Source: Schmidtea nova (taxonomy: Eukaryota). From it: 64,000 nt of DNA. A program made the position numbers and the translations under genes. Location: assembly GCA_044892505.1 (NCBI GenBank), contig CM097882.1:427490001-427554000 (forward strand), in the 5' to 3' direction. Each line of letters opens with the position of its first letter. The first letter of the stretch is position 1. A model generated the notes under the pieces. That model made no database searches and had not been told where the DNA came from. It saw only the letters and a list, made by a program, of their open reading frames with translations. This document shows positions 1-33,094 of the stretch, in pieces.

Positions 1-3000
1 CATCGACCACAGTTCAACCAACTACCACAACTCCAATCACAACTTCCACCCAACAAACAACAGTCACTCCAATCTCCACTACGCCATCTGCTACAACTAC
101 CAATCCAACAACGACAGTTCAATCAACTACGACAACTCCAATCACAACTTCCATCCAACAAACAACAGTCACTCCAATCTCCACTACGCCATCTGCTACA
201 ACTACCACTCCAACAACGACAGTTCAATCAACTACGACAACTCCAATCACAACTTCCATCCAACAAACAACAGTCACTCCAATCTCCACTACGTCATTTG
301 CTACAACTACCTCTCCATCGACCACAGTTCAACCAACTACCACAACTCCAATCACAACTTCCACCCAACAAACAACAGTCACTCCAATCTCCACTACGCC
401 ATCTGATACAACTACCACTCCAACAACGACAGTTCAATCAACTACCACAACTCCAATCACAACTTCCACCCAACAAACAACAGTCACTCCAATCTCCACA
501 ACGCCATCTGCTACAACTACCACTCCAACAACGACAGTTCAACCAACTACCACAACTCCAATCACAACTTCCACCCAACAAACAACAGTCACTCCAATCT
601 CCACTACGCCATCTGCCACAACTACCACTCCAACAACGACAGTTCAATCAACTACCACAACTCCAATCACTACTTCCACCCAACAAACAACAGTCACTCC
701 AATCTCCACAACGCCATCTGCTACAACTACCACTCCAACAACGACAGTTCAACCAACTACGACAACTCCAATCACAACTTCCACCCAACAAACAACAGTC
801 ACTCCAATCTCCACTACGCCATCTGATACAACTACCACTCCAACAACGACAGTTCAATCAACTACCACAACTCCAATCACAACTTCCACCCAACAAACAA
901 CAGTCACACCAATCTCCACAACGCCATATGCTACAACTACCACTCCAACAACGACAGTTCAACCAACTACCACAACTCCAATCACAACTTCCACCCAACA
1001 AACAACAGTCACTCCAATCTCCACTACGCCATCTGCCACAACTACCACTCCAACAACGACAGTTCAATCAACTACCACAACTCCAATCACTACTTCCACC
1101 CAACAAACAACAGTCACTCCAATCTCCACAACGCCATCTGCTACAACTACCACTCCAACAACGACAGTTCAACCAACTACGACAACTCCAATCACAACTT
1201 CCACCCAACAAACAACAGTCACTCCAATCTCCACTACGCCATCTGCCACAACTACCACTCCAACAACGACAGTTCAATCAACTACCACAACTCCAATCAC
1301 TACTTCCACCCAACAAACAACAGTCACTCCAATCTCCACAACGCCATCTGCTACAACTACCACTCCAACAACGACAGTTCAACCAACTACGACAACTCCA
1401 ATCACAACTTCCACCCAACAAACAACAGTCACTCCAATCTCCACTATGCCATCTGATACAACTACCACTCCAACAACGACAGTTCAATCAACTACCACAA
1501 CTCCAATCACAACTTCCACCCAACAAACAACAGTCACTCCAATCTCCACTACGTCATCTGCCACAACTACCACTCCAACAACGACAGTTCAATCAACTAC
1601 CACAACTCCAATCACAACTTCCACCCAACAAACAACAGTCACTCCAATCTCCACTACGTCATCTGCCACAACTACCACTCCAACAACGACAGTTCAACCA
1701 ACTACCACAACTCCAATCACAACTTCCACCCAACAAACAACCGTCACTCCAATCTCCACAACGCCATCTGCTACAACTACCACTCCAACAACGACAGTTC
1801 AATCAACTACGACAACTCCAATCACAACTTCCATCCAACAAACAACAGTCACTCCAATCTCCACTACGTCATTTGCTACAACTACCTCTCCATCGACCAC
1901 AGTTCAACCAACTACCACAACTCCAATCACAACTTCCACCCAACAAACAACAGTCACTCCAATCTCCACTACGCCATCTGCTACAACTACCAATCCAACA
2001 ACGACAGTTCAATCAACTACGACAACTCCAATCACAACTTCCATCCAACAAACAACAGTCACTCCAATCTCCACTACGCCATCTGCTACAACTACCACTC
2101 CAACAACGACAGTTCAATCAACTACGACAACTCCAATCACAACTTCCATCCAACAAACAACAGTCACTCCAATCTCCACTACGCCATCCGCTACAACTAC
2201 CACTCCAACAACGACAGTTCAATCAACTACAACAACTCCAATCACAACTGCCACCCAACAAACAACAGTCACTCCAATCAGCACAACGTCATTTGCTACA
2301 ACTACCTCTCCATCGACCACAGTTCAACCAACTACCACAACTCCAATCACAACTTCCACTCAACAAACAACAGTCACTCCAATCTCCACTACGCCATCTG
2401 ATACAACTACCACTCCAACAACGACAGTTCAATCAACGACCACAACTCCAATCACAACTTCCACCCAACAAACAACAGTCACTCCAATCTCCACAACGCC
2501 ATCTGCTACAACTACCACTCCAACAACGACAGTTCAACCAACTACGACAACTCCAATCACAACTTCCACCCAACAAACAACAGTCACTCCAATCTCCACT
2601 ACGCCATCTGCCACAACTACCACTCCAACAACGACAGTTCAATCAACTACCACAACTCCAATCACTACTTCCACCCAACAAACAACAGTCACTCCAATCT
2701 CCACAACGCCATCTGCTACAACTACCACTCCAACAACGACAGTTCAATCAACTACGACAACTCCAATCACAACTTCCACCCAACAAACAACAGTCACTCC
2801 AATCTCCACTACGCCATCTGCCACAACTACCACTCCAACAACGACAGTTCAATCAACTACCACAACTCCAATCACTAATTCCACCCAACAAACAACAGTC
2901 ACTCCAATCTCCACAACGCCATCTGCTACAACTACCACTCCAACAACGACAGTTCAACCAACTACGACAACTCCAATCACAACTTCCACCCAACAAACAA

Positions 3001-6000
3001 CAGTCACTCCAATCTCCACAACGCCATCTGCTACAACTACCACTCCAACAACGACAGTTCAACCAACTACGACAACTCCAATCACAACTTCCACCCAACA
3101 AACAACAGTCACTCCAATCTCCACTACGCCATCTGCTACAACTACCACTCCAACAACGACAGTTCAACCAACTACGACAACTCCAATCACAACTTCCACC
3201 CAACAAACAACAGTCACTCCAATCACCACAATGTCATCTGCTACAACTACCTCTCCATCGACCACAGTTCAACCAACTACCACAACTCCAATCACAACTT
3301 CCACACAACAAACAACAATCACTCCAATCACCACAACGTCATCTGCTACAACTACCACTCCAACAACGACAGTTCAATCAACTACGACAACTCCAATCAC
3401 AACTTCCATCCAACAAACAACAGTCACTCCAATCTCCACTACGCCATTTGCTACAACTACCACTCCAACAACGACAGTTCAATCAACTACAACAACTCCA
3501 ATCACAACTTCCACCCAACAAACAACAGTCACTCCAATCACCACAACGTCATCTGCTACAACTACCTCTCCATCGACCACAGTTCAACCAACTACCACAA
3601 CTCCAATCACAACTTCCACCCAACAAACAACAGTCACTCCAATCTCCACTACGCCATCTGCTACAACTACCACTCCAACAACGACAGTTCAATCAACTAC
3701 CACAACTCCAATCACAACTTCCATCCAACAAACAACAGTCACTCCAATCTCCACAACGCCATATGCTACAACTACCACTCCAACAACGACAGTTCAACCA
3801 ACTACCACAACTCCAATCACAACTTCCACCCAACAAACAACAGTCACTCCAATCTCCACTACGCCATCTGCCACAACTACCACTCCAACAACGACAGTTC
3901 AATCAACTACCACAACTCCAATCACTACTTCCACCCAACAAACAACAGTCACTCCAATCTCCACAACGCCATCTGCTACAACTACCACTCCAACAACGAC
4001 AGTTCAACCAACTACGACAACTCCAATCACAACTTCCACCCAACAAACAACAGTCACTCTAATCTCCACTACGCCATCTGCCACAACTACCACTCCAACA
4101 ACGACAGTTCAATCAACTACCACAACTCCAATCACTACTTCCACCCAACAAACAACAGTCACTCCAATCTCCACAACGCCATCTGCTACAACTACCACTC
4201 CAACAACGACAGTTCAACCAACTACGACAACTCCAATCACAACTTCCACCCAACAAACAACAGTCACTCCAATCTCCACTACGCCATCTGATACAACTAC
4301 CACTCCAACAACGACAGTTCAATCAACTACCACAACTCCAATCACAACTTCCACCCAACAAACAACAGTCACTCCAATCTCCACTACGTCATCTGCCACA
4401 ACTACCACTCCAACAACGACAGTTCAATCAACTACCACAACTCCAATCACAACTTCCACCCAACAAACAACAGTCACTCCAATCTCCACTACGTCATTTG
4501 CTACAACTACCTCTCCATCGACCACAGTTCAACCAACTACCACAACTCCAATCACAACTTCCACCCAACAAACAACAGTCACTCCAATCTCCACTACGCC
4601 ATCTGCTACAACTACCAATCCAACAACGACAGTTCAATCAACTACGACAACTCCAATCACAACTTCCATCCAACAAACAACAGTCACTCCAATCTCCACT
4701 ACGCCATCTGCTACAACTACCACTCCAACAACGACAGTTCAATCAACTACGACAACTCCAATCACAACTTCCATCCAACAAACAACAGTCACTCCAATCT
4801 CCACTACGCCATCCGCTACAACTACCACTCCAACAACGACAGTTCAATCAACTACAACAACTCCAATCACAACTTCCACCCAACAAACAACAGTCACTCC
4901 AATCAGCACAACGTCATTTGCTACAACTACCTCTCCATCGACAACAGTTCAACCAACTACCACAACTCCAATCACAACTTCCACCCAACAAACAACAGTC
5001 ACTCCAATCTCCACTACGCCATCTGATACAACTACCACTCCAACAACGACAGTTCAACCAACTACGACAACTCCAATCACAACTTCCACCCAACAAACAA
5101 CAGTCACTCCAATCTCCACTACGCCATCTGCCACAACTACCACTCCAACAACGACAGTTCAATCAACTACCACAACTCCAATCACTACTTCCACCCAACA
5201 AACAACAGTCACTCCAATCTCCACAACGCCATCTGCTACAACTACCACTCCAACAACGACAGTTCAATCAACTACGACAACTCCAATCACAACTTCCACC
5301 CAACAAACAACAGTCACTCCAATCTCCACTACGCCATCTGCCACAACTACCACTCCAACAACGACAGTTCAATCAACTACCACAACTCCAATCACTAATT
5401 CCACCCAACAAACAACAGTCACTCCAATCTCCACAACGCCATCTGCTACAACTACCACTCCAACAACGACAGTTCAACCAACTACGACAACTCCAATCAC
5501 AACTTCCACCCAACAAACAACAGTCACTCCAATCTCCACAACGCCATCTGCTACAACTACCACTCCAACAACGACAGTTCAACCAACTACGACAACTCCA
5601 ATCACAACTTCCACCCAACAAACAACAGTCACTCCAATCTCCACTACGCCATCTGCTACAACTACCACTCCAACAACGACAGTTCAACCAACTACAACAA
5701 CTCCAATCACAACTTCCACCCAACAAACAACAGTCACTCCAATCAGCACAACGTCATCTGCTACAACTACCTCTCCATCGACCACAGTTCAACCAACTAC
5801 CACAACTCTAATCACAACTTCCACCCAACAAACAACAGTCACTCCAATCTCCACTACGCCATCTGCTACAACTACCACTCCAACAACGACAGTTCAACCA
5901 ACTACCACAACTCCAATCACAACTTCCACCCAACAAACAACAGTCACTCCAATCATCACAACATCAATTGATACAACTACCACTCCATCGACCACAGTTC

Positions 6001-6015
6001 AATCAACTACCACAC
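1..6015 (+). repeat. 105-bp coding minisatellite array 1 (at least 57 units)
   Basis: 105-bp period; shadow ORFs recur every 210 bp. Variant blocks recur at 2,520-2,625 bp offsets. Confidence 0.95.
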
Positions 6016-6093
6016 CATTATCCTCATCATTTGGCCTTCTTTCTTCATTGCCTTCTACCACTCTGTCTTTCCCGCAGTCAACTGCATTAACAG
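1..6093 (+). CDS. Mucin PTS exon 1 (5'-partial), Thr/Ser/Pro-rich tandem-repeat domain
   Basis: Open Thr-rich frame from position 3 (includes ORF 1446..6146) of 35-aa repeats TPTTTVQSTTTTPITTSTQQTTVTPISTTPSATTT. Ends ...TTA ACA G|gttata, a phase-1 donor at 6094. Confidence 0.9.
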
Positions 6094-7336
6094 GTTATAT
6101 TTTGATTTTTAATAATTTCATGTTTGTTTCCCTAATGAAATATTAATCGTTTATTATTTATCCGCCAGACGGGAGTATGTATATATTATTCACAAATAAT
6201 ATATGCATCACATAATAATCACTTATAAATTATAATCACGAGTATAATTTAATAATATTTATGGTAATATTAATGTAAGTGATAATGAAATAATAAACTA
6301 TAAGTCACTTATTTATATTTTTTTAAAAAATCTTTTTTTTATTAAAAGTTATTTAGTTAATCTACGATAAGTTGATAATTAAATAATTAATAAAAAATTG
6401 AAAATAATTATTGTCTAACATTTATAAGTGAATAATTATTTTAGAATGTTAAGTTGCATAAATTATAAAATTAAAGAAAAATTAAAAAATTACAAAATTA
6501 TGTGAAGTGAAAATATATTTATATATCTTGTGTGATTTATGGAATGCGAACGATTACGTTATAATACGGACAGGGATATTGAGGCAGAATGATCCTACCC
6601 CCCTACTACTGTCAAATCTGAATTGATACATCAATTATTACAAACTAATTAGCGAAATAAAATAATTTGCTCTATAATATCGGACAAATAACGAAACTAT
6701 GAATGCACTACTAAACGTCGCCTATTTCCCTGCAGGAAATTGAAGGAACTGCTCTGAAGATAAAAGGAAATTTTTTTCAGATTTTCTTTAACTGTGTGTA
6801 ATATTCTTTCAAATTTAACCTAATGTTCTGTTTATTTTTAAGTATTACAGGTAGGATTTAACTGCCTAACTCCACACGTCTTTTTGATCAAACAGCCTTA
6901 ACGCAAAAAAAACAATATTTATTTTGCCTTAAACGAATCGTTAATGAAATTTAATAAATATTTATGAGTTTACCAAAGCTGAACTACCCTATCATACTTG
7001 TGGTAAGAACAATTTCTGTTCTTTAGGATTCTTAATTATTACATCGAAAACACGTTCTGACTGCGTTCTTTTGTTTGTTTGTTTCTGACTGTAGATTTTT
7101 TCTTAAGCAAATTCTAATTTATTTTCTGCCTCTTGTCGATTTCGGCCCTTATTTTATAGCGTTTTGCGCCACATTTCACCGTTGACTAAATTCCTACTAA
7201 ATTGGGTTTTATCTACTTCCAACAAGGGTTTACGAGAACTGTTTTTATTGAACAAAGAATTTTAAAGAAGTTTCAATTATTTGACGGTCACTTAGCTTTT
7301 TGTAATCAGCATATTATAATCTAATTTGATTTTGGG

Positions 7337-7950
7337 CAGGCATGCGCAACTTTTTCGTTATTGACGGCCGCATTACAGACTTTTTACTTTAATAACGACT
7401 ACCAGTAAGTTTAGAAAACCTAATAATGTTTTACGATTTATATAAAAATTTACATATAACGCAATAAAACAGAGTGTGATATTTCTGACAGTATCCAATT
7501 TACTGGTCTACATATGTAAAAAAATGTCTATGTAACGTTATATAGGACAAAAAAACGTTTTTCAACAATTATTTTAAAATGTTTGGAAAACAGCGCTAAT
7601 AATGGCTTCCTTGCTCTTGCATGTTTGCAGACAGACTTGCAAAGTCAGGGGACTCGCTGGAGACCATCAACCGTATTTAAGACTTTAGATTGCTTTCTAC
7701 CAATCGGTTTCGGAACTTGGTTTTCAGATATTTCATTCTGGCAAACGCTGCTTTGAACAAATAAGTGCTTCCGAAAAGAACGAGAATGTTTCTGGCCAGT
7801 TCTCCTAGTTGTGGGTATTCTGCTGCTGATTTCCACGTATCCAGCAAGTCGCTTTCATCCCCAAACCTTTTTACTAGTTGCTCATTGTTCTTCAACTCCA
7901 CTTGTTCTATTTGAAGATACAACGGTGTACTCTCTGTCTCCAACAAATGA
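7337..7950 (-). mobile_element. hAT transposon 3' remnant (dimerisation-domain C-terminus and candidate TIR)
   Basis: ORF 7677..7946: W...EYPQLGELARNILVLFGSTYLFKAAFARMKYLKTKFRNRL, the hAT dimerisation pattern. TIR-like CAGGCATGCGCAAC at 7337. Confidence 0.8.
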
Positions 7951-8377
7951 CCAGAAGCAATGAGTCTTATCTCTTTGGCTTCTAAAAACGAAAAGATTTT
8001 GCAAATAATTTTGGAAATATATGAAATTTTATATCAAAATTCATTAAAATAATACTTGCAACGTTATTTATTTATTCGACAGCTCCCCTATGAAATATTC
8101 CAAATATATACTCATAAACCTTATTTTCAAGATAATAAAAATTATTGCATGTCTCTTAATCTTGTAAAAAAATTTACTTTTTAAAGTATGCATGCATATT
8201 TCATTGTATGCTGTGTTTGTGTGTATAATTTATTTTTCCTTCTACTTTGTCTATCATATAGTAAATCTCTTAAACTATATAAAGTCAAAATTTATCACCA
8301 ACGTAAGTTTTCATTTGAAATTGATAATTTTTATCTTACTATATATAATCTCTAAATGTATGAAGAGGTGTGATTTT

Positions 8378-8497
8378 CGCGTTCAAGATCAATCTTTCAA
8401 ACATATCATTGACAAGGCTGCTTACAATTGATAATGCTTTCCCACATATAACCTTATCAACATGGACATTTTGCAGCACTTGATGAATGCAGATGCT
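8378..8497 (-). pseudogene. Histone H2B-like histone-fold fragment
   Basis: NSICIHQVLQNVHVDKVICGKALSIVSSLVNDMFERLILNAK aligns without gaps to H2B [42 protein letters not shown] (21/42 identical by eye, reference recalled from memory). Confidence 0.75.
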
Positions 8498-8730
8498 GTT
8501 TTTTAAGTTGGTTTAGCTTTTGATCCATATTCCGAAATATTTGACAGACATTGACCTTGTATCGTGAATTTTATAACAATCGACAGTTTCATTGTTTACT
8601 GTCTTCACTTTCTGCAAATGACGAATATAATACCAATAACGACTTTTGGAAGTAACAAAGTCAGATCGAAGGTTTTCATTTGATAAGAAGTTGGGTTTTG
8701 TTGCTTTTCAGTAAGCAATCTTCTCCCTGT

Positions 8731-8996
8731 TATCTTAAATTCTTTCAAGATCTCAATAGTCTCCACCAACGGTTCTTAAAATATGCGGTCGGTCAATCTT
8801 TAGGCATTGAAATCGATATTATTTGGGTTAATTGCAACTTGCTTTTTTTGCAGAATCTCCAATCAGTAAATGCTACATAACTGAGAGTTGTATGATTTCG
8901 TTGTTCGATGACAATAACTTCCACTTTGCCATGTTAAAACACTCCAACGCATGAATCGGTAGTGCCAAAATTGATATCAATTGCATAACCAGACAT
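8731..8996 (-). pseudogene. HSP70: HSP70 N-terminal fragment (stops and frameshifts)
   Basis: Manual translation: [44 protein letters not shown] / IGDSAKK / QVAINPNNIDFNA*RLTDRIF*EPLVE. Compare the canonical [68 protein letters not shown]. Confidence 0.85.
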
Positions 8997-10470
8997 ATTG
9001 AATTGAATTTCAAATTCGTATGAAAGTCACAATTATTATCTAAATTCTATTAAAAATTCAAAACAAATTTTAAATTTTTTTATATTTCCAAAAATCCGTT
9101 TTCAAATTTACAAAAGTTATTAAATCGCCAAAATTAATTTTACTATTTCGATCAAAAATATTATTGTCTAAAGATTCTTTAACAATTATTTAAATAAATT
9201 TCATTTTACATTTTATTTTTATTAATATTTCAAATTCACTTGTTATTTAAATTTTGCCTCTAAATCCCCCATACCATTCAAAACCCCATCAACTCTTTTA
9301 CTAATTAAAATTTATTTTTATTTTACTATGGCCGCAGCTAGGCGCGACCAAGGGATATGGCCATTTTTATAGGAGCACCAAATAATTGTATGCGGTAATC
9401 TACCCTGTATCATATATGGCCAATTTGATATAGATTAAATTGCCACATACCTTTCCATTTGGGGCTCATTTTAAAAATCGCCATATTTTGCAAATAGAAA
9501 GTAAATTTTAATTTCAAAATTAATAAATTAGCATTTGATAAAGAATAATTGAAAAGAGAAAAGATTAATTAATTTTTTTTCATTTTAGCATCAATTTCAT
9601 CGACAACAAACAAGATCGGTAATAATTATTTATAATTTATTTTTATAACATTTATACTATTATTATCATTTATTGGGAGTACATTTGACAGTGTTTTGCA
9701 GTCAGTATTGCACTAATTAGGTCAGCCATTCACAATTTACCTTATTTATTTATTCCCGATCCTTAATATGTGAAACATACACAAAAAGACAACAATGGCA
9801 ACGTGACTTGTCAAAAGATGAAGTCATTCCATTAAGGGGTGACCCTAACTGCCTAATAGTGAGAACGGCCGCAGGAAGCAAGTGGAGAAAAGAAAAGTTT
9901 TAGTAACATCAAAATTGAGATAATTCTTTTTAATAAACATGAGCGTTGTTGCTATGGAAATTGAATTAGTTGAAACGAAAATTTGAGCGCAATTGCGAGC
10001 TCTGTGAGAGCTCTGAACATTTCATTTAAACATCTTAATACATTTGCAGATTTTGCTTTTCTTTTTTTGCAGAAACAAATTATTCGGACAAATTGTTTCC
10101 TTCGCGGAACTTCTAGGAAACTTTGAGAAATTTATCATAAACAAGATAAACTTGAAATTAATATATTCAGTTTATGTAAATAAGCAATATTTGCTACACT
10201 TTATTTTGTTCCTAAGGGGGAATTCGCAGTATAAAACTGTACAACATAAATGCCGATGTTGAAGAAGAACTGGAACACCTTTGCTCTGTTTCGGATGATG
10301 AACGGAATATTCTCGGTTATGACAAATATAGGCCAGATTTGTCACCGGATGTTCATGTCTGTTAGTACGAGCAAATGTTATTTTATGACAACTTTTATAA
10401 ATTATGTTAAAGATTTATTCAAAGATTTATGATATATTTTATGTGTTGACATTTATTTATTTCCCTAAAG

Positions 10471-10681
10471 AAATCGTGACGGCCAAGCCAGCAGTGTCAG
10501 GGGAATACGAGAGTAAAGTGGGCATGAACTGCACATATACATCAGAGGTATACAATGACAATTATAAAGACAGAAATAGCAAAGAATATAAAGAGTTCAC
10601 AAATAGAATGTTTATAAGCATGAGAGATAGTCTTTTGCAGAGGTTGTTGAGGCTGATAGAAATCATATTCAATTCTATTGA
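10471..10681 (+). CDS. SEA domain 1, exon a
   Basis: Acceptor ttccctaaag|AA continues the phase-1 G from 6093 (GAA=E). Reads EIVTAKPAVSGEYESKVGMNCTYTSEVYNDNYKDRNSKEYKEFTNRMFISMRDSLLQRLLRLIEIIFNSI, with the SEA-like Y.D..S.EY..F pattern. Donor GA|gtaaag, phase 2. Confidence 0.8.
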
Positions 10682-10731
10682 GTAAAGATTTTATTCTTTA
10701 TATATTTATTCTACTTTCCCAATATTAACAG

Positions 10732-10862
10732 TCGTGGCAGCGTGATTGCGGATATGCAATTCGTTATGGCGTCGAATTCTTCGATGACTGGATCCAATTT
10801 GTCGGCCATAGTAATGTCAGCAGCAGTTGATGCTTCAAATAACTCTATTATTGTCAATAACT
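10732..10862 (+). CDS. SEA domain 1, exon b (GSVI motif)
   Basis: After a 50-nt intron, acceptor ttaacag|T completes GAT. Reads DRGSVIADMQFVMASNSSMTGSNLSAIVMSAAVDASNNSIIVNN. Donor T|gttagt, phase 1. Confidence 0.8.
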
Positions 10863-10912
10863 GTTAGTTAATTAATTAAATAATATAATCGTGTTTAACA
10901 TTTTACCTTTAG

Positions 10913-10948
10913 TTACGGTCCTTCAATCACCAATAATTGTGGAATACA
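10913..10948 (+). CDS. SEA domain 1, exon c (36-nt linker)
   Basis: After a 50-nt intron, acceptor ctttag|TT. Reads FTVLQSPIIVEY. Donor A|gtatga (phase 1) joins in frame to cag|CT at 16846. Confidence 0.7.
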
Positions 10949-11052
10949 GTATGAATTTTTTTTTCTTTGTATTTTTGTATATTTAACAAATAATTTTATA
11001 ATAATTTATCCTAATAATAATACTAATAATAATTATAATAAAAATAATAATA

Positions 11053-12436
11053 AATAAACTATTAAATAAAAATGGCAATTTATTCAGATAAATAAAAGAA
11101 TACCATTTTTTAAATATATTATTACAATATATTCAATAGCTCAGTTGTCATCATCAGCCTTTAAACAATTTCAATAAAATAAAAACTGATCTTATTTATA
11201 CGCTTATTAATGATTACATAATCACATGTAATAAAACTTTTATTAACACTAGAAAAATAATTAAAAAACTCTCAATATCCATTTAGATATTGCATTTTAT
11301 ATGTTTATTTTAGGATTTATTGATATATTATCAAAGGCTCACAATCCATACGTTCATAATAATTTTTAAAAACCCCTAGAAAGTATTTTGAAATTGGAAA
11401 TATCAATATTTTTCTTGCAAGCCTAATTATGCTCAATAATGTTACTCTTTCCACTCTTTCTGGCATGCTCTTAAACTCGTGTACAGAGATGATGGATAGT
11501 CTCTTCAATGTATGTGGAATTTCATCCATTACAAGTAAACCGATATACGAGATCAGAACCTAGACCAAATGGCACCACAGATTCATTACTGAACATGTCC
11601 CGAACTTTGCAAGACTTATAAATTATTTTAACATTAGTATTTATAATATATTTTCTAAAATATACAAAACTCTCAGAAAACGGTAAAACTATAACAGAAC
11701 CAATGCTATCCTTCAAATTATTTTTATTTATTTCATTATTACAACCATCAACACCATTGTTCATTCCCGTAACTACATCACCTGTTTCAATCTAAGGAGC
11801 ACTATGAAGGGAAATAAACGATTCAACACCAGGCGAAATTTTGTCATCAATCACATTACACTTATGAATTTACATTATCAACAGTTTCACTTACTATTCA
11901 TTGCAAGAAACACTTTGAATATCCGTTATTCTGTAGTAATTTAAATAATGTATCAATACTATTTATAGATTTCCAATAAATTAACGGAAATGTCCAAGAA
12001 CGACAAACCAATTCGATTATGATATTTCTTATTTATTTAAAATCACAAAAGCTTTCCGGTGATGTATAAGAACCAGTACCTGTTGTTTTCCTATAACTTT
12101 CGGTTTCAAAATTCTTAACTTTCTTTTCAATCAACAAATCAAGAAATGATATCTTTGAATTAATTTCCTATTCAAAAGTAAATTTAATAATTTTATGTAA
12201 ATTATTCATATAACACAAAATATGGCTCAACATGTTCTTTATTCTTAAATACAAGAAAAATATCATCAACATAACGTTTATATACTAAGGGTTTATTCAC
12301 ACTACAATTTATAAATTTATTTTCTAAACTTGACATAAAAATAGAGGCCAGTGTAGGAGCTAAATGTGAGCCCATGGCAACGCCATGAATTTGCTAATAC
12401 CATTGATTATCAAAGATAAAATGGACATTAGAAGTA
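11053..12436 (-). mobile_element. Penelope-like element family 1, inverted arm (RT C-terminal part, GIY-YIG, pLTR)
   Basis: ORF 11522..11764 ends VYRFTCNG. Reverse complement of 12940-14330. Confidence 0.85.
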
Positions 12437-14345
12437 GCACAATTTGAAAAGATTGTTAGTTTTCGTAAGAATGGCAAATTACCACCTTTAAAAGATGAAA
12501 CAATATTAATATCTCTACTTCATGAATTAATTTTAAATAACCATATAGATAAGGATATTGTTAATTCACTTTGGCCTCGGGGATCCCAACCTGCTAAATT
12601 ATATGGTCTTCCAAACGTACACAAAGATAATTTACCTATGAGACCTGTATCGTCAATGATTCAAACTTCTTAATATAAGGTTGCGAAGTTTTTAGATAGT
12701 TTGTTGAAACCCTTGATTAAGACTGAATATGAATGTAAAGATAGCTTTGAGTTTGCCTCTTTTATAGTAAATTTAAATAAGAGTATAGATGATGACTTTA
12801 TAGTTTCGTTTGATGTGGTTAGCCTTTTTACAAATGTTCCTTTAATAGAAACGATTGATATTTGTTGAGATTTATGGAGTGTTAACACTTCACTTCATAA
12901 TATTATTGATGTTGTTGCTTTTCGTAAACCTTTGACATTTGCTACTTCTAATGTTCATTTTATCTTTGATAATCAATGGTATAAGCAAATTGATGGCGTT
13001 GCCATGGGCTCACATTTAGCTCCTACACTGGCATCCATTTTTATGTCAAGTTTAGAAAATAAATTTATAAATTGTAGTGTGAATAAACCCTTAGTATATA
13101 CACGTTATGTTGATGACATTTTTCTTGTATTTAAGAATAAAGAACATGTTGAGCCTTTTTTGTATTATATGAGTGATTTGCATAGAAATATTAAATTTAC
13201 TTTTGAAGAAGAAATTAATTCTAAAATATCATTTCTTGATTTGTTGATTGAAAAGAAAGAGAAACATTTTGAAACTGAAAGTTATAGGAAAAGAACAGAT
13301 ACTGGTTTGTAAACATCACCGGAAAGCTTTTGTGATTTTAAATATAGAAGAAATATGATAAAGGGATTGGTTTGTCGTTCTTGGACATTGCCGTCAACTT
13401 ATTGTAAATAGTTTATAAATAGTTTATTAAATTACTTTATTTACTACAGAATAATGGATATTCAAAATGTTTCTTGCAACGAATGGGTAGTGAAACTGTT
13501 GATAAGTAAATTCATAAGTGTAATGTGATTGATGACAAAATTTCGCCTGGTGTTGAATCGTTTAATTACCTTCATAGTGCTCCTTAGATTGAAACAGGTG
13601 ATGTTGTTATAGGAATGAGTGATGATGGTGTTGATTGTAGTAATAATAATGAAATAAATAAAAGTATCTTGAATGATTGCATTGGTTCTGTTATAGTTTT
13701 ACGGTTTTCTAAGGGATTTGTAAATTTAAAAAAATCTATTATAAATTATATTGGAAATTTTAATGTTAAAATAATTTCTGAATCTTGCAAAGTTCGGGAC
13801 ATGTTCAGTAATAAATCTGTGACGCCATTTGGTCTGTGTTCTGGTCTCGTATATCGTTTTACTTGTAATGGGTGTAATGCCACATACATTGGAGAGACTG
13901 TCCATCATCTCTGTACACGGGTTCAAGAACATGCCAGAAAGAGCGGAAAGAGTAACATTATTGAGCATAATAAGACTTGCAAGAAGAGCATTGGTATTTC
14001 TAATTTTAAAATACTTTCTAAGGGTTTTAAAAATTATTATGAGCTTGTGAATTGTGAGGCTTTGATGATAAAATCATTTAATCTAAAAATAAACATACAA
14101 AATGCAATATATACATGCATTTTGAGAGTGTTTAATTAATTTTACTAGGGTAAATTAAAAGTTCAATTGGATTATGCACATGTAATTATGTAATCACTTT
14201 TAAGCGTATAAAAAAGATCAATTTTTATTTTTTGAGATTGTGGAAAGCCTGATGATGACAGCTAAGCTGTTGAAATATATTGCATTAATATATTTAAAAA
14301 AATGGTGTTCTCTTATTTATATGAATAAATTGCCATTTTTATATA
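12437..14345 (+). mobile_element. Penelope-like element family 1, 5'-truncated (RT, GIY-YIG endonuclease, pLTR)
   Basis: RT motifs YGLPNVHK..PMRP, DVVSLFTNVP, QIDGVAMGSHLAP and YTRYVDDIF. Endonuclease motif VYRFTCNGCNATYIGETVHHLCTRVQEH...EALMIK. Multiple stops. Confidence 0.9.
14240..14300 (+). ncRNA. Candidate hammerhead-ribozyme-like motif in a PLE pLTR
   Basis: CTGATGA-t-GACAGC(TAA)GCTGTT-GAA-ATATATT(GCATT)AATATAT. The core boxes and stems II and III are present. Stem I is not convincingly paired and there is an extra T after the first box. Confidence 0.45.
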
Positions 14346-14539
14346 ATAGAATAATAATAGATAATAGATAATAATAATAGATAATTAAAACAAAACATGA
14401 CAACGATTTAATAATTAAGAAACGCTAACAAATTATATTCAACAATAACGCTATCTATTTCGTCCGAATAACAGTCGTCTCCACGCCAATAAATCAGGAT
14501 AATCAATAATAATCCCTTTCAAATTGTATGAAGCTTCTA

Positions 14540-16640
14540 ATACTTTCTAATACCATTAGAATTCTAATTCAGCTGCGCTGACTTTTTGCTTATATAGCAC
14601 ATCACATTTTGTGGTACTTGAAACAAATGTGTTTTTCAACTTTGGTTTTCGCCTTTTTTCCACCACTCTCGTCTTATCGCTGACAGCTGGTGAGATATGT
14701 TTGCGTTTTCATTTTGTTGTTCCGACTTTTTCTTCTACCATTCCTATATTTCTGACAGGCTGTAAAAATATTACTTTCTCTTCGCTTTTTTTGTTATTCG
14801 ATTTCGAAATTCTTTTTGCCATTTGGTACGTTTTATTTAATGACCTTTTTTAGTTATTTATTCAATTTCCTTTGTTTCACTGCCATCTTCTCGTTTCTCA
14901 AGTTTTGTTTTTTTCGTAATTTTAATCGTTACGTCATTTATCCTGTTCATTTTCCCCCAACCATTTTATTTGTTTGTGCCAATATTTATATTATTATTTA
15001 GGTATCCTCGACAATTATAAGAAAAACTCAATTCAAACTTAAACACTAAGTTACTTAAAGACATTCCAAATATCAGTGGAACAAGCAACTTGAGCATTTA
15101 ATTTTGGCTTTAAATATCTAATCAACAATGCCTCACATGTTACTCGTTCGCAATAATTACTCAAACTTTTCGCAAATATTTTAAAATTTGAGATACCAAT
15201 TTTTTTAATGACACATTTCCTAAAATTATTACTTATATTAATAATAAGACATAGTGAGTGCTCGGCACTACTTTGTTTCACGTGGTAACTGTTGCTCACG
15301 TAAAGACACTCATAAATGCGTAATCATCAGCTTTTACATAGGACACAAATTCATAAACATAGAAACTCTATGTGTTTAGCCAGGGAACAGTTAGAGTGAA
15401 TGAAACATATATATTTGTAAACACCAGAGAAATAAATGGTTTTACACAATAAAAAGTAACGAAAGAAATTTGGTGGGAAAAATAAGAGTTTAGCATGTGG
15501 GCATTATAGGGGAAGTGACTCTTTTATAGACCAACAGGATGATCAAGTTTGCAACTCAGTTCAATCACTCAATACAGATTATCGTCTTAATCTCTCAGCT
15601 TTGTGCAAAATTTGGTTTTCATTGTGTTTTATATTTTTTTAATTATTTTTATAAATTTTATTGTATTGTACAGATTTGTCTCAGTCTGTTTTTGTTCTGA
15701 CAAAATGTACTACTTTTATGAATTGTTTTAATTCATTTTATTATGTAAAACCATTTATTTCTTTGGTGTTTACAAATATTAATATGTTTCATTCACTCGG
15801 TTCCCTTAGTAAATACCGAGAGTTATTATGTTTATAAATTTGTGTGCTATGTAAAAACCAATGATTAAGCATTATTGGGCGTCTTTATGCAAGTAAAAGT
15901 TAGCACGTGAAACAAAGTAGTGCCTTGCACTCACCATGTCCTTTTACTATTATTAGTAATAATTTTAGGAAATGTGTTATTAAAAAATAGGTATCTCAAA
16001 ATTTAAAATTAGTGCGAAATGTTTGAGTAATTATTGCGAACGAGTAACATGTGAGGCATTGTTGATTAGATATTTAAAGCCAAAATTTATTGCTCAAGTT
16101 GCTCGTTCCACTGATATTATTATTCTCTTTAAGTAACTAAATGTTTAGGTTTGAATTGGGTTTTTGTTATAATTGTTGAGGATACCTAAATAATAAAATA
16201 AATAATGGCACAAACAAATAAAATGATTGGGAGTAATAAATAGGATAAATGGTGTAATGATAAGCATTACGAAAAAAAGAGGTTTGAAGAACAAAACTTG
16301 GGAAACGAGAAGATGGAAGTGAAACAAAGAAATCAAATAAATAACTAAAAAAGGGCATTAATTAAAAAATAGAGGTAAAAATATTTTCGAAATCGAAAAA
16401 CAAAAAGAAAGTTATAAGTTGAAAGCCTGTCAGAAATATCAAAATGGTAGAGGAAAAAGTCGGAACAACAAAATGAAAACGCAAACATATCTCACCAGCT
16501 GTCAGCGATAAGAGGAGAGTGGTGGAAAAAGGCGAAAAGCAAAGTTGAAAAACACATTTGTTTCAAGTACAACAATATTTGACGCGCTATAAACGCAAAA
16601 ATATCAGCGCAGCTAAATTAGAATTCTAATGGTATTACAA
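14540..16640. mobile_element. Penelope-like element family 2: two inverted GIY-YIG-containing arms (14540-15455 minus, 15725-16640 plus)
   Basis: About 900-bp inverted repeat. Decayed VYKFVC motif and KKIGISNFKIFAKSLSNYCERVTCEALLIRYLKPKLNAQV (ORF 15051..15299). Confidence 0.75.
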
Positions 16641-16845
16641 AGTTGTGTGAAGAAATTGTGTTTTCGAAATATTAACGAGAAAGTGTTATTTAGAAGCTAT
16701 TATCACAATAATCGTTCAAAATTAAACAGTAAATCTTATATTTTCTTTTATTGTTATTTTGCAAAATATATTCATTAATATTTTGAATAATATTTAAATT
16801 AATAATTACATCAAAAAAAACATAATTTTTGAAATTTTATTTCAG

Positions 16846-19800
16846 CTACAAATCCAATCACAACTTCCACCCAACAAACAACAGTCACTCCAATCAGCAC
16901 AACGTCATCTGCTACAACTACCACTCCAACAACAACAGTTCAATCAAATACCACAACTCCAATCACAACTTCCACTCAACAAACAACATTCACTCCAATC
17001 ATCACAACATCAATTGATACAACTACCATTCCATCAACGACAGTTCAATCAACTACCACAACTCCAATCACAACTTCCACACAACAAACAACATTCACTC
17101 CAATCACCACAACGTCATCTGCTACAACTACCACTCCAACAACGACAGTTCAATCAACTACCACCACTCCAATCACAACTTCCACTCAACAAACAACATT
17201 CACTCCAATCATCACAACATCAACTGATACAACTACCATTCCATCAACGACAGTTCAATCAACTACCACCACTCCAATCACAACTTCCACCCAACAAACA
17301 ACATTCACTCCAATCACCACAACGTCATCTGCTACAACTACCACTCCAACAACGACAGTTCAATCAACTACCACCACTCCAATCACAACTTCCACCCAAC
17401 AAACAACATTCACTCCAATCACCACAACGTCATCTGCTACAACTACCACTCCAACAACGACAGTTCAATCAACTACCACCACTCCAATCACAACTTCCAC
17501 CCAACAAACAACAGTCACTCCAATCACCACAACATCATCTGCTATAACTACCACTCCATCAACGACAGTTCAATCAACTTCCACAATTCCAATCACAACT
17601 TCCAGCCAACAAACAACTGTCACACCTATCACCACAACGTCATCTGCTACAACTACTACCCCAACAACAACAGTTCAATCAACTACAACAACTCCAATCA
17701 CAACTTCCACCCAACAAACAACAGTCACTCCAATCACCACAACGCCATCTGCTTCAACTACCACTCCAACAACGACAGTTCAATCTGCTACCACAACTCC
17801 AATCACAACTTCCACCCTACAGACAACAGCCACTCCAATCACCACAACGCCATCTGCTACAACTACCACTCCAACAACGACAGTTCAATCAACTACCACC
17901 ACTCCAATCACAACTTCCACCCAAAAGACAACAGTCACTCCAATCACCACAACGTCATCTGCTACAACTACTACTCCAACAACGACAAATATCTCAACTA
18001 CCACAACTCAAATCACAACTTCCACCCAACAAACAACAGTCACTCCAATCATCACAACATCAATTGATACAACTACCATTCCATCAACGACAGTTCAATC
18101 AATTACCACCACTCCAATCACAACTTCCACCCAACAAACAACAGTCACTCCAATAACCACAACGTCATCTGCTATAACTACCACTCCATCAACGACAGTT
18201 CAATCAACTTCCACAATTCCAATCACAACTTCCACCCAACAAACAACAGTCACTCCGATCACCACAACGTCATCTGCTACAACTACCTCTCCAACAACAA
18301 CAGTTCAATCAAATACCACAACTCCAATCACAACTTCCACACAACAAACAACATTCACTCCAATCACCACAACGTCATCTGCTACAACTACCACTCCAAC
18401 AACGACAGTTCAATCAACTACAACAACTCCAATCACAACTTCCACCCAACAAACAACAGTCACTCCAATCAGCACAACGTCATCTGCTACAACTACCACT
18501 CCAACAACAACAGTTCAATCAAATACCACAACTCCAATCACAACTTCCACTCAACAAACAACATTCACTCCAATCAGCACAACGTCATCTGCTACAACTA
18601 CCACTCCAACAACGACAGTTCAATCTGCTACCACAACTCCAATCACAACTTCCACCCTACAGACAACAGCCACTCCAATCACCACAACGCCATCTGCTAC
18701 AACTACCACTCCAACAACGACAGTTCAATCAACTACCACCACTCCAATCACAACTTCCACCCAAAAGACAACAGTCACTCCAATCACCACAACGTCATCT
18801 GCTACAACTACTACTCCAACAACGACAAATATCTCAACTACCACAACTCAAATCACAACTTCCACCCAACAAACAACAGTCACTCCAATCATCACAACAT
18901 CAATTGATACAACTACCATTCCATCAACGACAGTTCAATCAATTACCACCACTCCAATCACAACTTCCACCCAACAAACAACAGTCACTCCAATAACCAC
19001 AACGTCATCTGCTATAACTACCACTCCATCAACGACAGTTCAATCAACTTCCACAATTCCAATCACAACTTCCACCCAACAAACAACAGTCACTCCAATC
19101 ACCACACCGCCATCTGCTACAACTACCCCGCCAACAACGACAGTTCAATCAACTACTTCAATTCCAATCACAACTTCCAGCCAACAAACAACAGTCACTC
19201 CCATCACCACAACGCCATCTGCTACAACTACCACTCCAACAACGACAGTTCAATCAACTACCACCACTCCAATCACAACTTCCACCCAACAAACAACATT
19301 CACTCCAATCACCACAACGTCATCTGCTACAACTACCACTCCAACAACGACAGTTCAATCAACTACCACCACTCCAATCACAACTTCCACCCAACAAACA
19401 ACAGTCACTCTAATCACCACAACATCATCTGCTATAACTACCACTCCATCAACGACAGTTCAATCAACTTCCACAATTCCAATCACAACTTCCAGCCAAC
19501 AAACAACTGTCACACCTATCACCACAACGTCATCTGCTACAACTACTACCCCAACAACAACAGTTCAATCAACTACCACAACTCCAATCACAACTTCCAC
19601 CCAACAAACAACAGTCACTCCAATCACCACAACGCCATCTGCTTCAACTACCACTCCAACAACGACAGTTCAATCAACTACAACAACTCCAATCACAACT
19701 TCCACCCAACAAACAACAGTCACTCCAATCACCACAACATCATCTGCTATAACTACCACTCCATCAACGACAGTTCAATCAACTTCCACAATTCCAATCA

Positions 19801-28190: not shown

Positions 28191-28269
28191 CCATTATCCT
28201 CATCATTTGGCCTTCTTTCTTCATTGCCTTCTACCACTCTGTCTTTCCCGCAGTCAACTGCATTAACAG
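16846..28269 (+). CDS. Mucin PTS exon 2 (11,424 nt, about 3,808 aa)
   Basis: Acceptor ttttatttcag|CT ACA AAT CCA ATC. Length divisible by 3 (phase 1-1). No stop noticed in the Thr frame while reading. Same 3' end and donor (ACA G|gttata) as exon 1. Missing from the ORF track because it has no in-frame start codon. Confidence 0.85.
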
Positions 28270-29511
28270 GTTATATTTTGATTTTTAATAATTTCATGTT
28301 TGTTTCCCTAATGAAATATTAATCGTTTATTATTTATCCGCCAGACGGGAGTATGTATATATTATTCACAAATAATATATGCATCACATAATAATCACTT
28401 ATAAATTATAATCACGAGTATAATTTAATAATATTTATGGTAATATTAATGTAAGTGATAATGAAATAATAAACAATAAGTCACTTATTTATATATTTTT
28501 TTAAAATTTCTTTTTTTTATTAAAAGTTATTTAGTTAATCTACGATAAGTTGATAATTAAATAATTAATAAAAAATTGAAAATAATTATTGTCTAACATT
28601 TATAAGTGAATAATTATTTTAGAATGTTAAGTTGCATAAATTATAAAATTAAAGAAAAATTAAAAAATTACAAAATTATGTGAAGTGAAAATATATTTAT
28701 ATATCTTGTGTGATTTATGGAATGCGAACGATTACGTTATAATACGGACAGGGATATTGAGGCAGAATGATCCTACCCCCCTACCACTGTCAAATCTGAA
28801 TTGATACATCAATAATTACAAACTATTTAGCGAAATAAAATAATTTGCTCTATAATATCGGACAAATAACGAAACTATGAATGCACTACTAAACGTCGCC
28901 TATTTCCCTGCAGGAAATGGAAGTAACTGCTCTGAAGATAAAGGAAATTTTGTTCAGATTTTTTTTAACTGTGTGTAATATTCTTTCAAATTTAACCTAA
29001 TGTTCTGTTTATTTTTAAGTATTACAGGTAGGATTTAACTGCCTAACTCCACACGTCTTTTTGATCAAACAGCCTTAACTCGAAAAATAACAATATTTAT
29101 TTTGCCTTAAACGAATCGTTAATGAAATTTAATAAATATTTATGAGTTTACCAATGCTGAACTACCCTATCCTACTTGTGGTAAGAACAATTTCTGTTCT
29201 TTGGAATTCTCAAATATTACATCGAATGACGTTCTGACTGCGTTCTCTTGTTTGTTTATTTATAACAGTCGAATTTTTCTTCAGCAAATGGTAAATTTCT
29301 TCTACTGCTTGTCGGATTCGGCCTTTATTTTAAAGGGTTTCCGCCACATCCCAACATTGACTAAATTCCTACTAAATTGGATTTTATCTACTACCCACAA
29401 GGGTTTACGAGAACTGTTTTTATTGAACAAGAATATTTAAAGAAGTTTCAATTATTTGACGGTCACTTAGCTTTTTGTAATCAGCATATTATAATCTTAT
29501 TTTGTTTTGGG

Positions 29512-30125
29512 CAGGCATGCGCAACTTTTTCGTTATTGACGACCGCATTACAGACTTTTTATTTTAATAACGACTACCAGTAAGTTTAGAAAACCTAATA
29601 ATGTTTTATGATTTATATAAAAATTTACATATAACGCAATAAAACAGAGTGTGATATTTCTGACAGTATCCAATTTACTGGTCTACATATGTAAAAAAAT
29701 GTCTATGTAACGTTATATAGGACAAAAAACGTTTTTCAGCAATTATTTTAAGATCTTTGGAAAACATCGCCAATAATGGTTTACTTGCTCTTGCATGTTT
29801 GCAGACAGACTTGCAAAGTCAGGGGACTCGCTGGAGACCATCAACCGTATTTTAGACTCTAAATTGCTTTCTACCAATCGGTTTCGGAACTTGTTTTTCA
29901 GATATTTCATTCTGGCAAACGCTGCTTTGAACAAATAAGTGCTTCCGAAAAGAACGAGAATGTTTCTGGCCAGTTCTCCTAGCTGTGGGTATTCTGCTGC
30001 TGATTTCCACGTATCCAGCAAGTCGCTTTCATCCCCAAACCTTTTTAATAGTTGCTCATTGTTCTTTAACTCCACTTGTTCTATTTGAAGATACAACGGT
30101 GTACTCTCTGTCTCCACCAAATGAC
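29512..30125 (-). mobile_element. hAT transposon 3' remnant, duplicate copy
   Basis: ORF 29743..30120 is a more intact version (...RNRLVESNLESKIRLMVSSESPDFASLSANMQEQVNH). Same candidate TIR at 29512. Confidence 0.8.
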
Positions 30126-30553
30126 CAGAAGCAACGAGTCTTATCTCTTTGTCTTCTAAAAACGAAAAGATTTTGCAAATAATTTTATAAATATATGAAA
30201 TTTTATATCAAAATTCATTAAAATAATACTTGCAACGTTATTTATTTATTCTACAGCTCCCCTATGAAATATTCCAAATATATACACATAAACCTTATTT
30301 TCAAGATAATAAAAATTATTGCAGGTCTCTTAATCTTGTAAAAAAATTTACTTTTTAAAGTATGCATGCATATTTCATTGTATGCTGTGTTTGTGTGTAT
30401 AATTTATTTTTCCTTCTACTTTGTCTATCATATAGTAAATCTCTTAAAATATATAAAGTCAAAATTTATCACCAACGTAAGTTTTCATTTGAAATTGATA
30501 ATTTTTATCTTACTATATATAATCTCTAAATGTATGAAAAGAGGTGTGGTTTT

Positions 30554-30673
30554 CGCATTCAAGATCAATCTTTCAAACATATCATTGACAAGGCTGCTTA
30601 CAATTGATAATGCTTTCCCACATATAACCTTATCAACATGGACATTTTGCAGCACTTGATGAATGCAGATGCT
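30554..30673 (-). pseudogene. Histone H2B-like fragment, duplicate copy
   Basis: Paralog of 8378-8497 at offset 22,176. Confidence 0.75.
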
Positions 30674-30906
30674 GTTTTTTAAGTTGGTTTAGCTTTTGAT
30701 CCATATTCCGAAATATTTGACAGACATTGACCTTGTATCGTGAATTTTATAGCAATCGACAGTTTCATTGTTTCCTGTCTTCACTTTCTGAAAATGATGA
30801 ATGAAATACCAATAACGACTTTTGGAAGTAACAAAGTCAGATCGAAGGTTTTCATTTGATAAGAAGTTGGGTTTTGTTGCTTTTCAGTAAGCAATCTTCT
30901 CCCTGT

Positions 30907-31172
30907 TATCTTAAATTCTTTCAAGATCTCAATAGTCTCCACCAACGGTTCTTAAAATATGCGGTCGGTCAATCTTTAGGCATTGAAATCGATATTATTT
31001 GGGTTAATTGCAACTTGCTTTTTTTGCAGAATCTCCAATCAGTAAATGCTACATAACTGAGAGTTGTATGATTTCGTTGTTCGATGACAATAACTTCCAC
31101 TTTGCCATGTTAAAACACTCCAACGCATGAATCGGTAGTGCCAAAATTGATATCAATTGCATAACCAGACAT
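30907..31172 (-). pseudogene. HSP70: HSP70 N-terminal fragment, duplicate copy
   Basis: Paralog of 8731-8996 at offset 22,176. Confidence 0.85.
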
Positions 31173-32863: not shown

Positions 32864-32913
32864 GTAAAGTTTTTATTCTTTATATATTTATTCTACTTTC
32901 CCAATATTAACAG

Positions 32914-33044: not shown

Positions 33045-33094
33045 GTTAATTAATTAATTAAATAATATAATCGTGTTTAACATTTTACCTTTAG

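What the first reader, a model, noticed from the sequence alone, without database searches (positions are those of the whole stretch)
8378..8996. Intronic antisense chimera: HSP70 N-terminus followed by a histone H2B-like fold
Seen in sequence: on the minus strand an ATG-initiated HSP70 nucleotide-binding-domain start (about 85 codons, decayed) is followed about 230 bp later by a gap-free H2B-like histone fold. The spacer has only faint H3-like words (KTQLLIK, FQKS, C..IH..R), which I cannot support firmly. The unit lies next to a same-strand hAT transposase remnant and is duplicated at 30554-31172. Inference: either a relic of an unreported HSP70-histone-fold fusion gene, or host fragments captured as transposon cargo (Pack-type hAT or template switching).
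Basis: partly seen in the sequence, partly recalled or inferred. Interest (0 to 1): 0.75.

Follow-up and report, generated by a model that had tools for sequence, protein, structure and literature searches.

The report
Dead three-gene mosaic pseudogene in intron
The region is a decayed, non-coding patchwork of partial copies of three very abundant housekeeping messages (HSP70, ribosomal protein eL20 and histone H2B) inside an intron of a mucin-like gene, so it is an ordinary kind of genomic fossil and not a new fusion gene.

Summary
On the minus strand, 8996-8375 carries the first ~82 codons of a cytosolic HSP70, and further on about 41 codons of histone H2B (residues ~35-78, less than a whole histone fold). 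The "spacer" between them is not H3-like. It is ribosomal protein eL20/RPL18A, residues ~6-83 (PDB E 1e-9; 1.84-billion-protein library E 5e-10).

The three partial pieces abut, share one orientation, and carry stops and frameshifts. They form a 32-38% GC island in 13-25% GC intron DNA.

The second copy (30551-31172) is 99% identical and has the same breaks. It lies inside a 6.4-kb segmental duplication of a mucin exon-intron module, so it is not evidence of transposition.

The neighbouring hAT remnant (7336-7970) is only the last 635 bp of an element. It has no partner end or second target-site copy, and about 400 bp of AT-rich DNA separates it from the mosaic.

Best reading: a chimeric processed pseudogene, made by reverse-transcriptase template switching or by end-joining of cDNA fragments. 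Transposon cargo is a weaker rival. A fusion-gene relic is very unlikely. Other copies in the host genome could not be searched. Interest is low.

The parts
8752..8996 (-). HSP70 fragment: start codon to about residue 82 of a cytosolic HSP70/HSC70-type nucleotide-binding domain. Broken by 3 in-frame stops and 1 frameshift. The lower bound is uncertain by about 20 nt.
   Evidence: PDB phmmer. Two collinear DnaK tblastn matches, joint E 6e-6. The 20-aa middle piece is not significant on its own.
8519..8751 (-). eL20 (RPL18A) fragment, residues ~6-83. Broken by 1 frameshift, with no stop inside.
   Evidence: E 9.5e-10; E 4.9e-10 in 1.84e9 proteins; names; residues 6-30 and 35-83, joint E 1.4e-14.
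8375..8497 (-). Histone H2B fragment, residues ~35-78 only, covering roughly alpha1, loop 1 and most of alpha2. No break inside. One stop lies in the short stretch between it and the eL20 part.
8350..9010 (-). The whole mosaic seen as a composition island: 32-38% GC between flanks of 13-25% GC.
30551..31172 (-). Second copy of the mosaic: HSP70 30928-31172, eL20 30695-30927, H2B 30551-30673. It is 99% identical to the first copy and shares its breaks.
7336..7970 (-). hAT (FAM200/ZBED5/GTF2IRD2-like) right-hand end. It holds the last 123 codons of the transposase (1 in-frame stop in this copy) plus the 3' non-coding part up to the element tip. The rest of the element is absent.
   Evidence: (E 5e-48). 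Searches show 88% DNA identity over 637 bp to a Ladona fulva contig, ending exactly at the tip.
29511..30144 (-). The same hAT end in the duplicated block, with no stop in its 123 codons.
7971..8374 (.). AT-rich stretch (19-25% GC) between the mosaic and the hAT end. No recognisable content.
6000..12451 (+). Duplicated block, paired with 28176-34604 at 95.8% identity. It holds the end of a mucin exon, the intron with the hAT end and the mosaic, and a possible SEA-like exon.
6094..16845 (+). Host intron region between two giant Thr-rich exons. The GT donor is at 6094 and the AG acceptor ends at 16845. Small exons may lie inside it.

Best explanation
The region is a dead mosaic pseudogene. It consists of three partial, sense-oriented copies of abundant host messages, joined head to tail with little or nothing between them: the HSP70 5' end, then eL20, then an internal piece of H2B.

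The most likely origin is RNA. One route is a reverse transcriptase (from a non-LTR, LTR or Penelope-like element) that began on one message and switched template twice. The other is cDNA fragments joined and captured at a chromosome break. Either way the product landed antisense in an intron of a mucin-like gene.

It then decayed neutrally. Later it was copied passively when a 6.4-kb exon-intron module of the mucin gene duplicated. The hAT end beside it is a separate, truncated insertion.

Shown: the identity, bounds, orientation and breaks of the pieces; the intronic antisense position; and the segmental nature of the duplicate. Inferred: the RNA origin and the template switching.
For: All three pieces are identified by tools. 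They are on the same strand. At most ~20 nt lies between the alignable parts, and the HSP70 and eL20 matches meet or overlap.

All three parents are highly expressed housekeeping genes. [quoted passage not shown]

The eL20 piece runs unbroken across residue ~67, where the one animal eL20 gene I could inspect has a 5.3-kb intron.

The mosaic is a discrete GC island. A reverse transcriptase source exists in the same window, in the form of Penelope-like RVT_1 plus GIY-YIG ORFs.

Identity to conserved parents is only about 45-68%, and both copies share all breaks. The decay is therefore old and predates the duplication.
Against: No A-tail and no flanking direct repeat were found (and reading). The H2B part is cut at both ends, and the HSP70 part is not a full-length copy. 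Features i, ii and v of the published definition are therefore not met, or are blurred by age and AT-rich flanks.

No retroelement sequence is joined to the mosaic. The host's own eL20 gene structure is unknown. HSP70 and H2B genes are commonly intronless, so they say nothing about RNA versus DNA origin. No other copy could be looked for, because the host genome is not in any searchable collection.
Confidence: 0.58

Rival explanations
1. DNA-level capture by a transposon. The fragments would have been copied in as filler during repair of a gap in the neighbouring hAT element (Pack-TIR type), or picked up by a Helitron-like element.
For: A hAT end lies about 400 bp away on the same strand. In animals hAT carries most Pack-TIRs (208 of 370), and these form by template switching during gap filling (PMC8277862). 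Such repair can string fillers together.
Against: Only the right-hand 635 bp of the hAT is present. Its terminal 12-18-mer has no inverted partner anywhere in the window, and the 8-bp flank has no second copy nearby. About 400 bp of unrelated AT-rich DNA separates the hAT end from the mosaic. In that study most single-copy Pack-TIRs were cis duplications lying close to the parental copy on the same chromosome, whereas here there are three different housekeeping genes. The eL20 piece lacks an intron position seen in an animal eL20 gene. Reading the flanks showed no obvious GC-rich hairpin of the Helitron kind, but I did not scan for Helitron ends.
Confidence: 0.2
2. Three independent pseudogene fragments that ended up side by side by chance or by nested insertion and deletion.
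For: No shared boundary marks (target duplication, tail) tie the three together.
Against: The pieces are directly abutting, in the same orientation and of similar decay. They form one compact GC island of about 650 bp. No other such fragments came to notice in the parts of the 64-kb window that were examined; the introns were not scanned exhaustively.
Confidence: 0.07
3. Relic of a once-functional HSP70-histone-fold fusion gene.
For: The first piece begins at an ATG, and the H2B piece has no internal break.
Against: The middle piece is eL20. Every piece is truncated inside its domain. H2B lacks the end of alpha2, alpha3 and alphaC. There is a stop at a junction and the pieces lie in three frames. 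Word searches with the H2B and eL20 pieces found no candidates. None of 106 eL20-like proteins has an HSP70 or H2B part, and the best identity of any library hit is 52%.
Confidence: 0.02
4. Artefact: chimeric cDNA contamination or a misassembly.
For: Mosaics of abundant messages are typical of library chimeras.
Against: The pieces are heavily diverged from very conserved proteins and carry stops and frameshifts. The mosaic occurs twice, in two diverged copies of its surrounding intron (96-97% over 4.4-6.4 kb).
Confidence: 0.03

Closest known systems
Tripartite chimeric retropseudogenes formed by double template switching during LINE reverse transcription (human, mouse, Magnaporthe; PMC2104539)
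   Same: There are three different cellular transcripts' copies, directly fused in one transcriptional orientation. The parents are abundant RNAs and the product is non-functional.
   Different: In the published cases the 3' part is usually a LINE or SINE with an A-rich tail, the 5' part is a full-length RNA copy, and the best case has a 14-bp target duplication. Here all three parts are mRNA pieces, two are cut at both ends, and no tail or target duplication is visible.
LTR-retrotransposon-mediated partial or chimeric retrocopies (reviewed in PMC5470649)
   Same: These are partial coding fragments of host mRNAs. More than one switch gives chimeras of several transcripts.
   Different: Such copies are flanked by LTR-element sequence on both sides. 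No repeat pair flanks this mosaic within the 4.4 kb around it.
Pack-TIR / Pack-hAT captures in animals (PMC8277862)
   Same: Host gene fragments lie next to hAT sequence, and template switching is the proposed joining process.
   Different: Pack-TIRs hold the cargo between the two ends of one element. Here only one end exists and it is about 400 bp away.
Ordinary processed pseudogenes of ribosomal protein genes
   Same: The eL20 part looks like an intron-less copy of a very abundant message.
   Different: It covers only residues 6-83, has no 3' end or tail, and is fused to two other genes' fragments.

Membership tests
Chimeric retropseudogene by RT template switching (features i-v of PMC2104539) | Parts directly joined, in the same transcriptional orientation | tested here: met
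   HSP70 runs to ~8752, eL20 covers 8751-8519 and H2B covers 8497-8375, all on the minus strand.
Chimeric retropseudogene by RT template switching (features i-v of PMC2104539) | The 5' part is a full-length copy of a cellular RNA | tested here: not met
   The HSP70 part starts at the start codon but holds only ~82 codons. Whether the 5' UTR is present cannot be told.
Chimeric retropseudogene by RT template switching (features i-v of PMC2104539) | The 3' part is a 5'-truncated copy reaching the RNA's 3' end (A-rich tail) | tested here: not met
   H2B stops at residue ~78 in both copies, and no A-run follows.
Chimeric retropseudogene by RT template switching (features i-v of PMC2104539) | Flanked by short direct repeats (target-site duplication) | tested here: inconclusive
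   No direct repeat brackets the island. The flanks are 13-25% GC and old, so a target duplication could be erased.
Chimeric retropseudogene by RT template switching (features i-v of PMC2104539) | Parts lack the introns of their parent genes | tested here: inconclusive
   The eL20 part is continuous across residue ~67, an intron site in the Pomphorhynchus laevis eL20 gene. The host's own genes were not available.
Pack-TIR (Pack-hAT) | Cargo lies between the two terminal inverted repeats of one element | tested here: not met
   The hAT tip at 7336/7337 has no inverted partner in the window at up to 3 mismatches in 18 nt or 2 in 12 nt.
Pack-TIR (Pack-hAT) | 8-bp target-site duplication at both ends | tested here: not met
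   The 8-mer flanking the tip recurs only at 37674, which is unrelated.
Pack-TIR (Pack-hAT) | Parental sequence elsewhere in the genome, with microhomology at the breakpoints | not testable with these tools
   The host genome is not in any searchable collection.
Histone H2B (functional histone-fold protein) | Complete histone fold (alpha1-alpha2-alpha3) plus alphaC in one open frame | tested here: not met
   Only residues ~35-78 align. The Pfam Histone score of 19.9 bits is below the gathering score of 26.4.
HSP70 | Complete nucleotide-binding and substrate-binding domains | tested here: not met
   Only ~82 N-terminal codons remain, with 3 stops and 1 frameshift. There is no Pfam hit for any piece.
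Ribosomal protein eL20 (Ribosomal_L18A) | Sequence similarity to eL20 across the family | tested here: met
   55 of 57 PDB hits are eL20, the best at E 9.5e-10. There are 100 library hits, and named ones are eL20. The copy is partial and frameshifted, so it is a pseudogene fragment and not a gene.
hAT transposon (FAM200/ZBED5/GTF2IRD2-like group) | Transposase with a C-terminal hAT dimerisation region | tested here: met
   58 homologues, the best at E 5e-48. Pfam Dimer_Tnp_hAT is weak, at E 1e-3. Relatives carry the FAM200-ZBED5/GTF2IRD2-like domains.
hAT transposon (FAM200/ZBED5/GTF2IRD2-like group) | Both ends and a whole transposase (an intact element) | tested here: not met
   Relatives' upstream ~100 residues find nothing in the window. 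DNA similarity to the Ladona copy starts at 7970 and ends at the tip.

The most novel reading that the evidence does not exclude
The mosaic could be one member of a family of mRNA-only, multi-switch chimeras. These would be made by an arthropod reverse transcriptase, for instance that of the Penelope-like elements in the same introns, jumping between internal sites of abundant messages without leaving any retroelement sequence. If many such mosaics, or mobile copies of this one, exist in the host genome, that would document a little-described route of sequence shuffling outside mammals and fungi.
Probability: 0.1. Interest if true: 0.4.

Novelty: new member of a known kind. Interest (0 to 1): 0.2.

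Why it matters
It matters mostly as a correction. An apparent 'HSP70-histone fusion' is really a three-part dead mosaic whose middle third is a ribosomal protein. Its 'second copy' is a by-product of a duplicated mucin exon-intron module.

Such mosaics are useful as markers of past reverse-transcriptase activity, and this one helps date the module duplication. It does not point to a new gene, domain architecture or mobile element. Tripartite chimeras made only of mRNA pieces are seldom described in invertebrates, so a genome-wide count in the host would have modest value.

Tried and rejected
**H3-like spacer:** rejected, because the spacer is eL20.

**Pfam on the pieces:** only Histone and Dimer_Tnp_hAT gave weak hits. 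There was nothing for the HSP70 or eL20 pieces, so PDB sequence search carried the identifications.

**The 20-aa middle HSP70 piece alone:** not significant. Its place in HSP70 rests on the collinear DnaK match.

**Word searches with the H2B (67 aa) and eL20 (64 aa) pieces:** no candidates.

**Two metagenome scans for the junction 23- and 24-mers:** nothing.

**Exact look-up of a window ORF, to find the host assembly:** not on record.

**Rfam and tRNA scans for small-RNA parts of the chimera:** nothing.

**A second eL20 piece downstream of H2B:** a 17-nt repeat suggested it, but it is no better than shuffles.

**Partner terminal repeat, second target-site copy, flanking LTR-like repeats:** none found.

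**Intron positions of insect eL20 genes from papers:** not found in the texts read.

- I did not read the three pieces through as one protein.
- I did not scan the viral contig collection for a virus carrying histone and HSP70 genes side by side, because that could fetch animal-virus contigs.

Full report
**Setting.** The window is AT-rich eukaryotic DNA and nothing suggests it is human. Three long stretches (9-6014, 16848-28190, 44420-55549) are arrays of a 105-bp unit with no indels. In one plus-strand frame they are open for 2047+, 3829 and 3748 codons, with 50-52% threonine plus serine and proline. They are bounded by canonical splice sites: acceptors ending at 16845 and ~44412, and donors at 6094, ~28270 and ~55643. 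These are giant exons of a mucin-like gene. The 27-30% GC DNA between them is intron, possibly with small exons. The finding lies in the first such intron, on the opposite strand, so 'intronic antisense' holds at the level of a sequence-based gene model.

**The observation.** I translated the minus strand in three frames and cut it at stops. Each open piece was searched on its own.
- **HSP70.** The ATG at 8996 opens a piece matching residues 3-21 of cytosolic HSP70/HSC70 (E 0.08). The next piece matches residues 23-47 (E 1e-3, 17 of 25 identical). The following 20-aa piece, in another frame, is too short to score alone. With E. coli DnaK as a neutral comparator, tblastn gives two collinear matches, residues 2-43 at 8990-8865 and residues 55-93 at 8847-8731, with a joint E of 6e-6. 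The HSP70 part therefore runs from 8996 to about 8752, or ~82 codons. It has three in-frame stops and one frameshift.
- **H2B.** The piece 8342-8512 matches histone H2B and nothing else. All 60 listed PDB hits (of 179 at E<=1) are H2B. The best single-domain hit has E 1.2e-6, and Pfam Histone scores E 9e-4, below its cut-off. The match covers H2B residues ~35-78 (window 8497-8375) and ends there in both copies.

**The spacer.** This is the main correction. The ~230 bp between the two is not H3-like. The 64-aa piece 8516-8707 matches ribosomal protein eL20 (RPL18A) residues 33-83 at E 9.5e-10, and 55 of its 57 PDB hits are eL20. The piece before it, in another frame, matches eL20 residues 6-34 (E 0.024). 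Pfam and the word search both missed this, so I ran the exhaustive search. It found 100 proteins at E<=1e-3 among 1.84 billion, the best at 4.9e-10, with identity never above 52%. Members that carry names are 'Large ribosomal subunit protein eL20'. Against one of them, tblastn places residues 6-30 at 8751-8677 and residues 35-83 at 8665-8519, with a joint E of 1.4e-14. The eL20 part has one frameshift and no stop.

**Anatomy.** Reading 5' to 3' on the minus strand, the order is HSP70 (1 to ~82), eL20 (~6-83), then H2B (~35-78).
- All three are sense-oriented. The HSP70 and eL20 matches meet or overlap, and about 20 nt, with one stop, lies between eL20 and H2B.
- Together they form a 32-38% GC island of about 650 bp. 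It sits between flanks of 13-18% GC upstream and 19-25% GC downstream.
- Identity to very conserved parents is only 45-68%, so the copies are old and have evolved without constraint.
- No A-tail, flanking direct repeat, small-RNA part or tRNA was found.

**The duplicate.** Region 30476-31276 aligns to 8300-9100 with 791 of 803 columns identical and every break shared. It is embedded in a block, 6000-12451 against 28176-34604, that is 95.8% identical over 6466 bp. That block starts inside the mucin exon and includes its splice donor. The third intron shares only its first ~100 bp with the other two and has no mosaic. The second copy therefore arose by duplication of a mucin exon-intron module, about 22 kb away, after the mosaic had already decayed. 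It says nothing about mobility.

**The hAT neighbour.**
- The C-terminal hAT piece is real. It has 58 homologues, the best at E 5e-48, and belongs to the FAM200/ZBED5/GTF2IRD2-like group.
- Relatives match only their last 123 residues, at 7970-7602. Their upstream parts find nothing anywhere in the window.
- A contig of the dragonfly Ladona fulva matches 7970-7336 at 88% DNA identity over 637 bp. The match ends exactly at the same terminal bases in both, after which the flanks differ. So 7336-7970 is the right-hand 635 bp of an element that arrived by transposition and later lost the rest.
- Its terminal 12-18-mer has no inverted partner, and its 8-bp flank has no nearby second copy.
- About 400 bp of featureless AT-rich DNA separates it from the mosaic.
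- The features that define a Pack-type hAT are therefore not met. The match to Ladona suggests, but does not prove, an insect host.

**Mechanism.** Three partial copies of abundant messages, fused directly in one orientation, are what reverse-transcriptase template switching produces. [quoted passage not shown] LTR-element reverse transcription gives partial and, with repeated switches, chimeric retrocopies (PMC5470649).
- **In favour of an RNA origin.** The eL20 part is continuous across residue ~67, where the eL20 gene of the acanthocephalan Pomphorhynchus laevis has a 5.3-kb intron. Intron-less ribosomal protein copies are read as retrocopies in Drosophila (PMC2246290). Penelope-like RT plus GIY-YIG ORFs in the same introns show that reverse transcriptases were active here.
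- **Against a textbook case.** There is no tail, no target duplication and no retroelement part. Two of the pieces are cut at both ends. Joining of cDNA fragments at a break is therefore an equally good variant, and I fold it into the same explanation.
- **DNA-level capture.** Capture by a transposon, through gap filling with template switches (PMC8277862), remains possible at about 0.2.
- **Fusion-gene relic.** This is very unlikely. Every part is truncated inside its domain, the parts lie in different frames with a stop at a junction, and none of 106 eL20-like proteins retrieved carries an HSP70 or H2B part.

**Limits.** The host genome is not in any collection I could search by DNA. A window ORF is not on record, two junction scans of metagenomes were blank, and the word searches were blank. 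The parents' intron positions, the junction microhomology and the relative ages of the pieces also need the host's own genes.

I did not run a joined read-through of the three pieces. I did not scan the viral contig collection, because it could fetch animal-virus contigs.

- In early private reasoning I recalled HSP70 and H2B residues from memory.

**Verdict.** The thing itself is an ordinary, dead chimeric pseudogene, duplicated passively. It is a new member of a known kind and of low interest.

Noticed in passing
window 9-6014, 16848-28190, 44420-55549 (+): Giant exons made of a 105-bp (35-aa) Thr/Ser/Pro-rich repeat with no indels. They are open for 2047+, 3829 and 3748 codons and have canonical splice sites. 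This is a very large mucin-like gene built of repeated exon-intron modules.
   Followed up: partly
window 11059-12449 and 12931-14349; also 33238-34841 and 39618-40571: Penelope-like retroelement remains: RVT_1 (E 5e-9) and GIY-YIG (E 9e-4) ORFs on the plus strand at 12932-14139. They are arranged as a 1.4-kb head-to-head inverted pair at 87% identity, with further copies in the next intron. No hammerhead ribozyme or other Rfam family reached threshold. The ORFs are fragmentary and I did not count the breaks.
   Followed up: partly
window 14542-15454 and 15736-16643; also 41335-42082 and 43302-44202: A second inverted-repeat pair (85% identity), with copies in the second intron. Parts are weakly similar at protein level to the GIY-YIG ORF of the Penelope-like element, so it is probably another family of the same kind.
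   Followed up: no
window 10404-10685 and 32586-32867 (+): An open frame with a weak SEA-domain match (E 0.034), preceded by a pyrimidine tract and AG. It may be a small exon of the mucin-like gene inside the 'intron'.
   Followed up: no
window 7336-7970 and L005 5188-5823: The hAT end is 88% identical in DNA to a copy in the dragonfly Ladona fulva (contig KZ308649.1), non-coding part included. This is either a clue to the host lineage or a sign of horizontal spread of this hAT family. L005 contains N runs, which I left as they are.
   Followed up: partly
window 37626-37976 (-): A 117-aa ORF with a weak DUF7041 match (E 6e-4), possibly a retroelement Gag-like remnant.
   Followed up: no
window 62694-63507 (+): A different, less regular tandem array (periods 25, 49 and 187 nt) that is open in all three plus frames and Ser/Thr/His/Ala-rich. 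It may be another repetitive exon of the same gene.
   Followed up: no
window 6948-7262 versus 29126-29496: Within the otherwise 96-99% identical duplicated block, this stretch just beyond the hAT tip is much more diverged (about 69-88% at translated level). I have no explanation for it.
   Followed up: no
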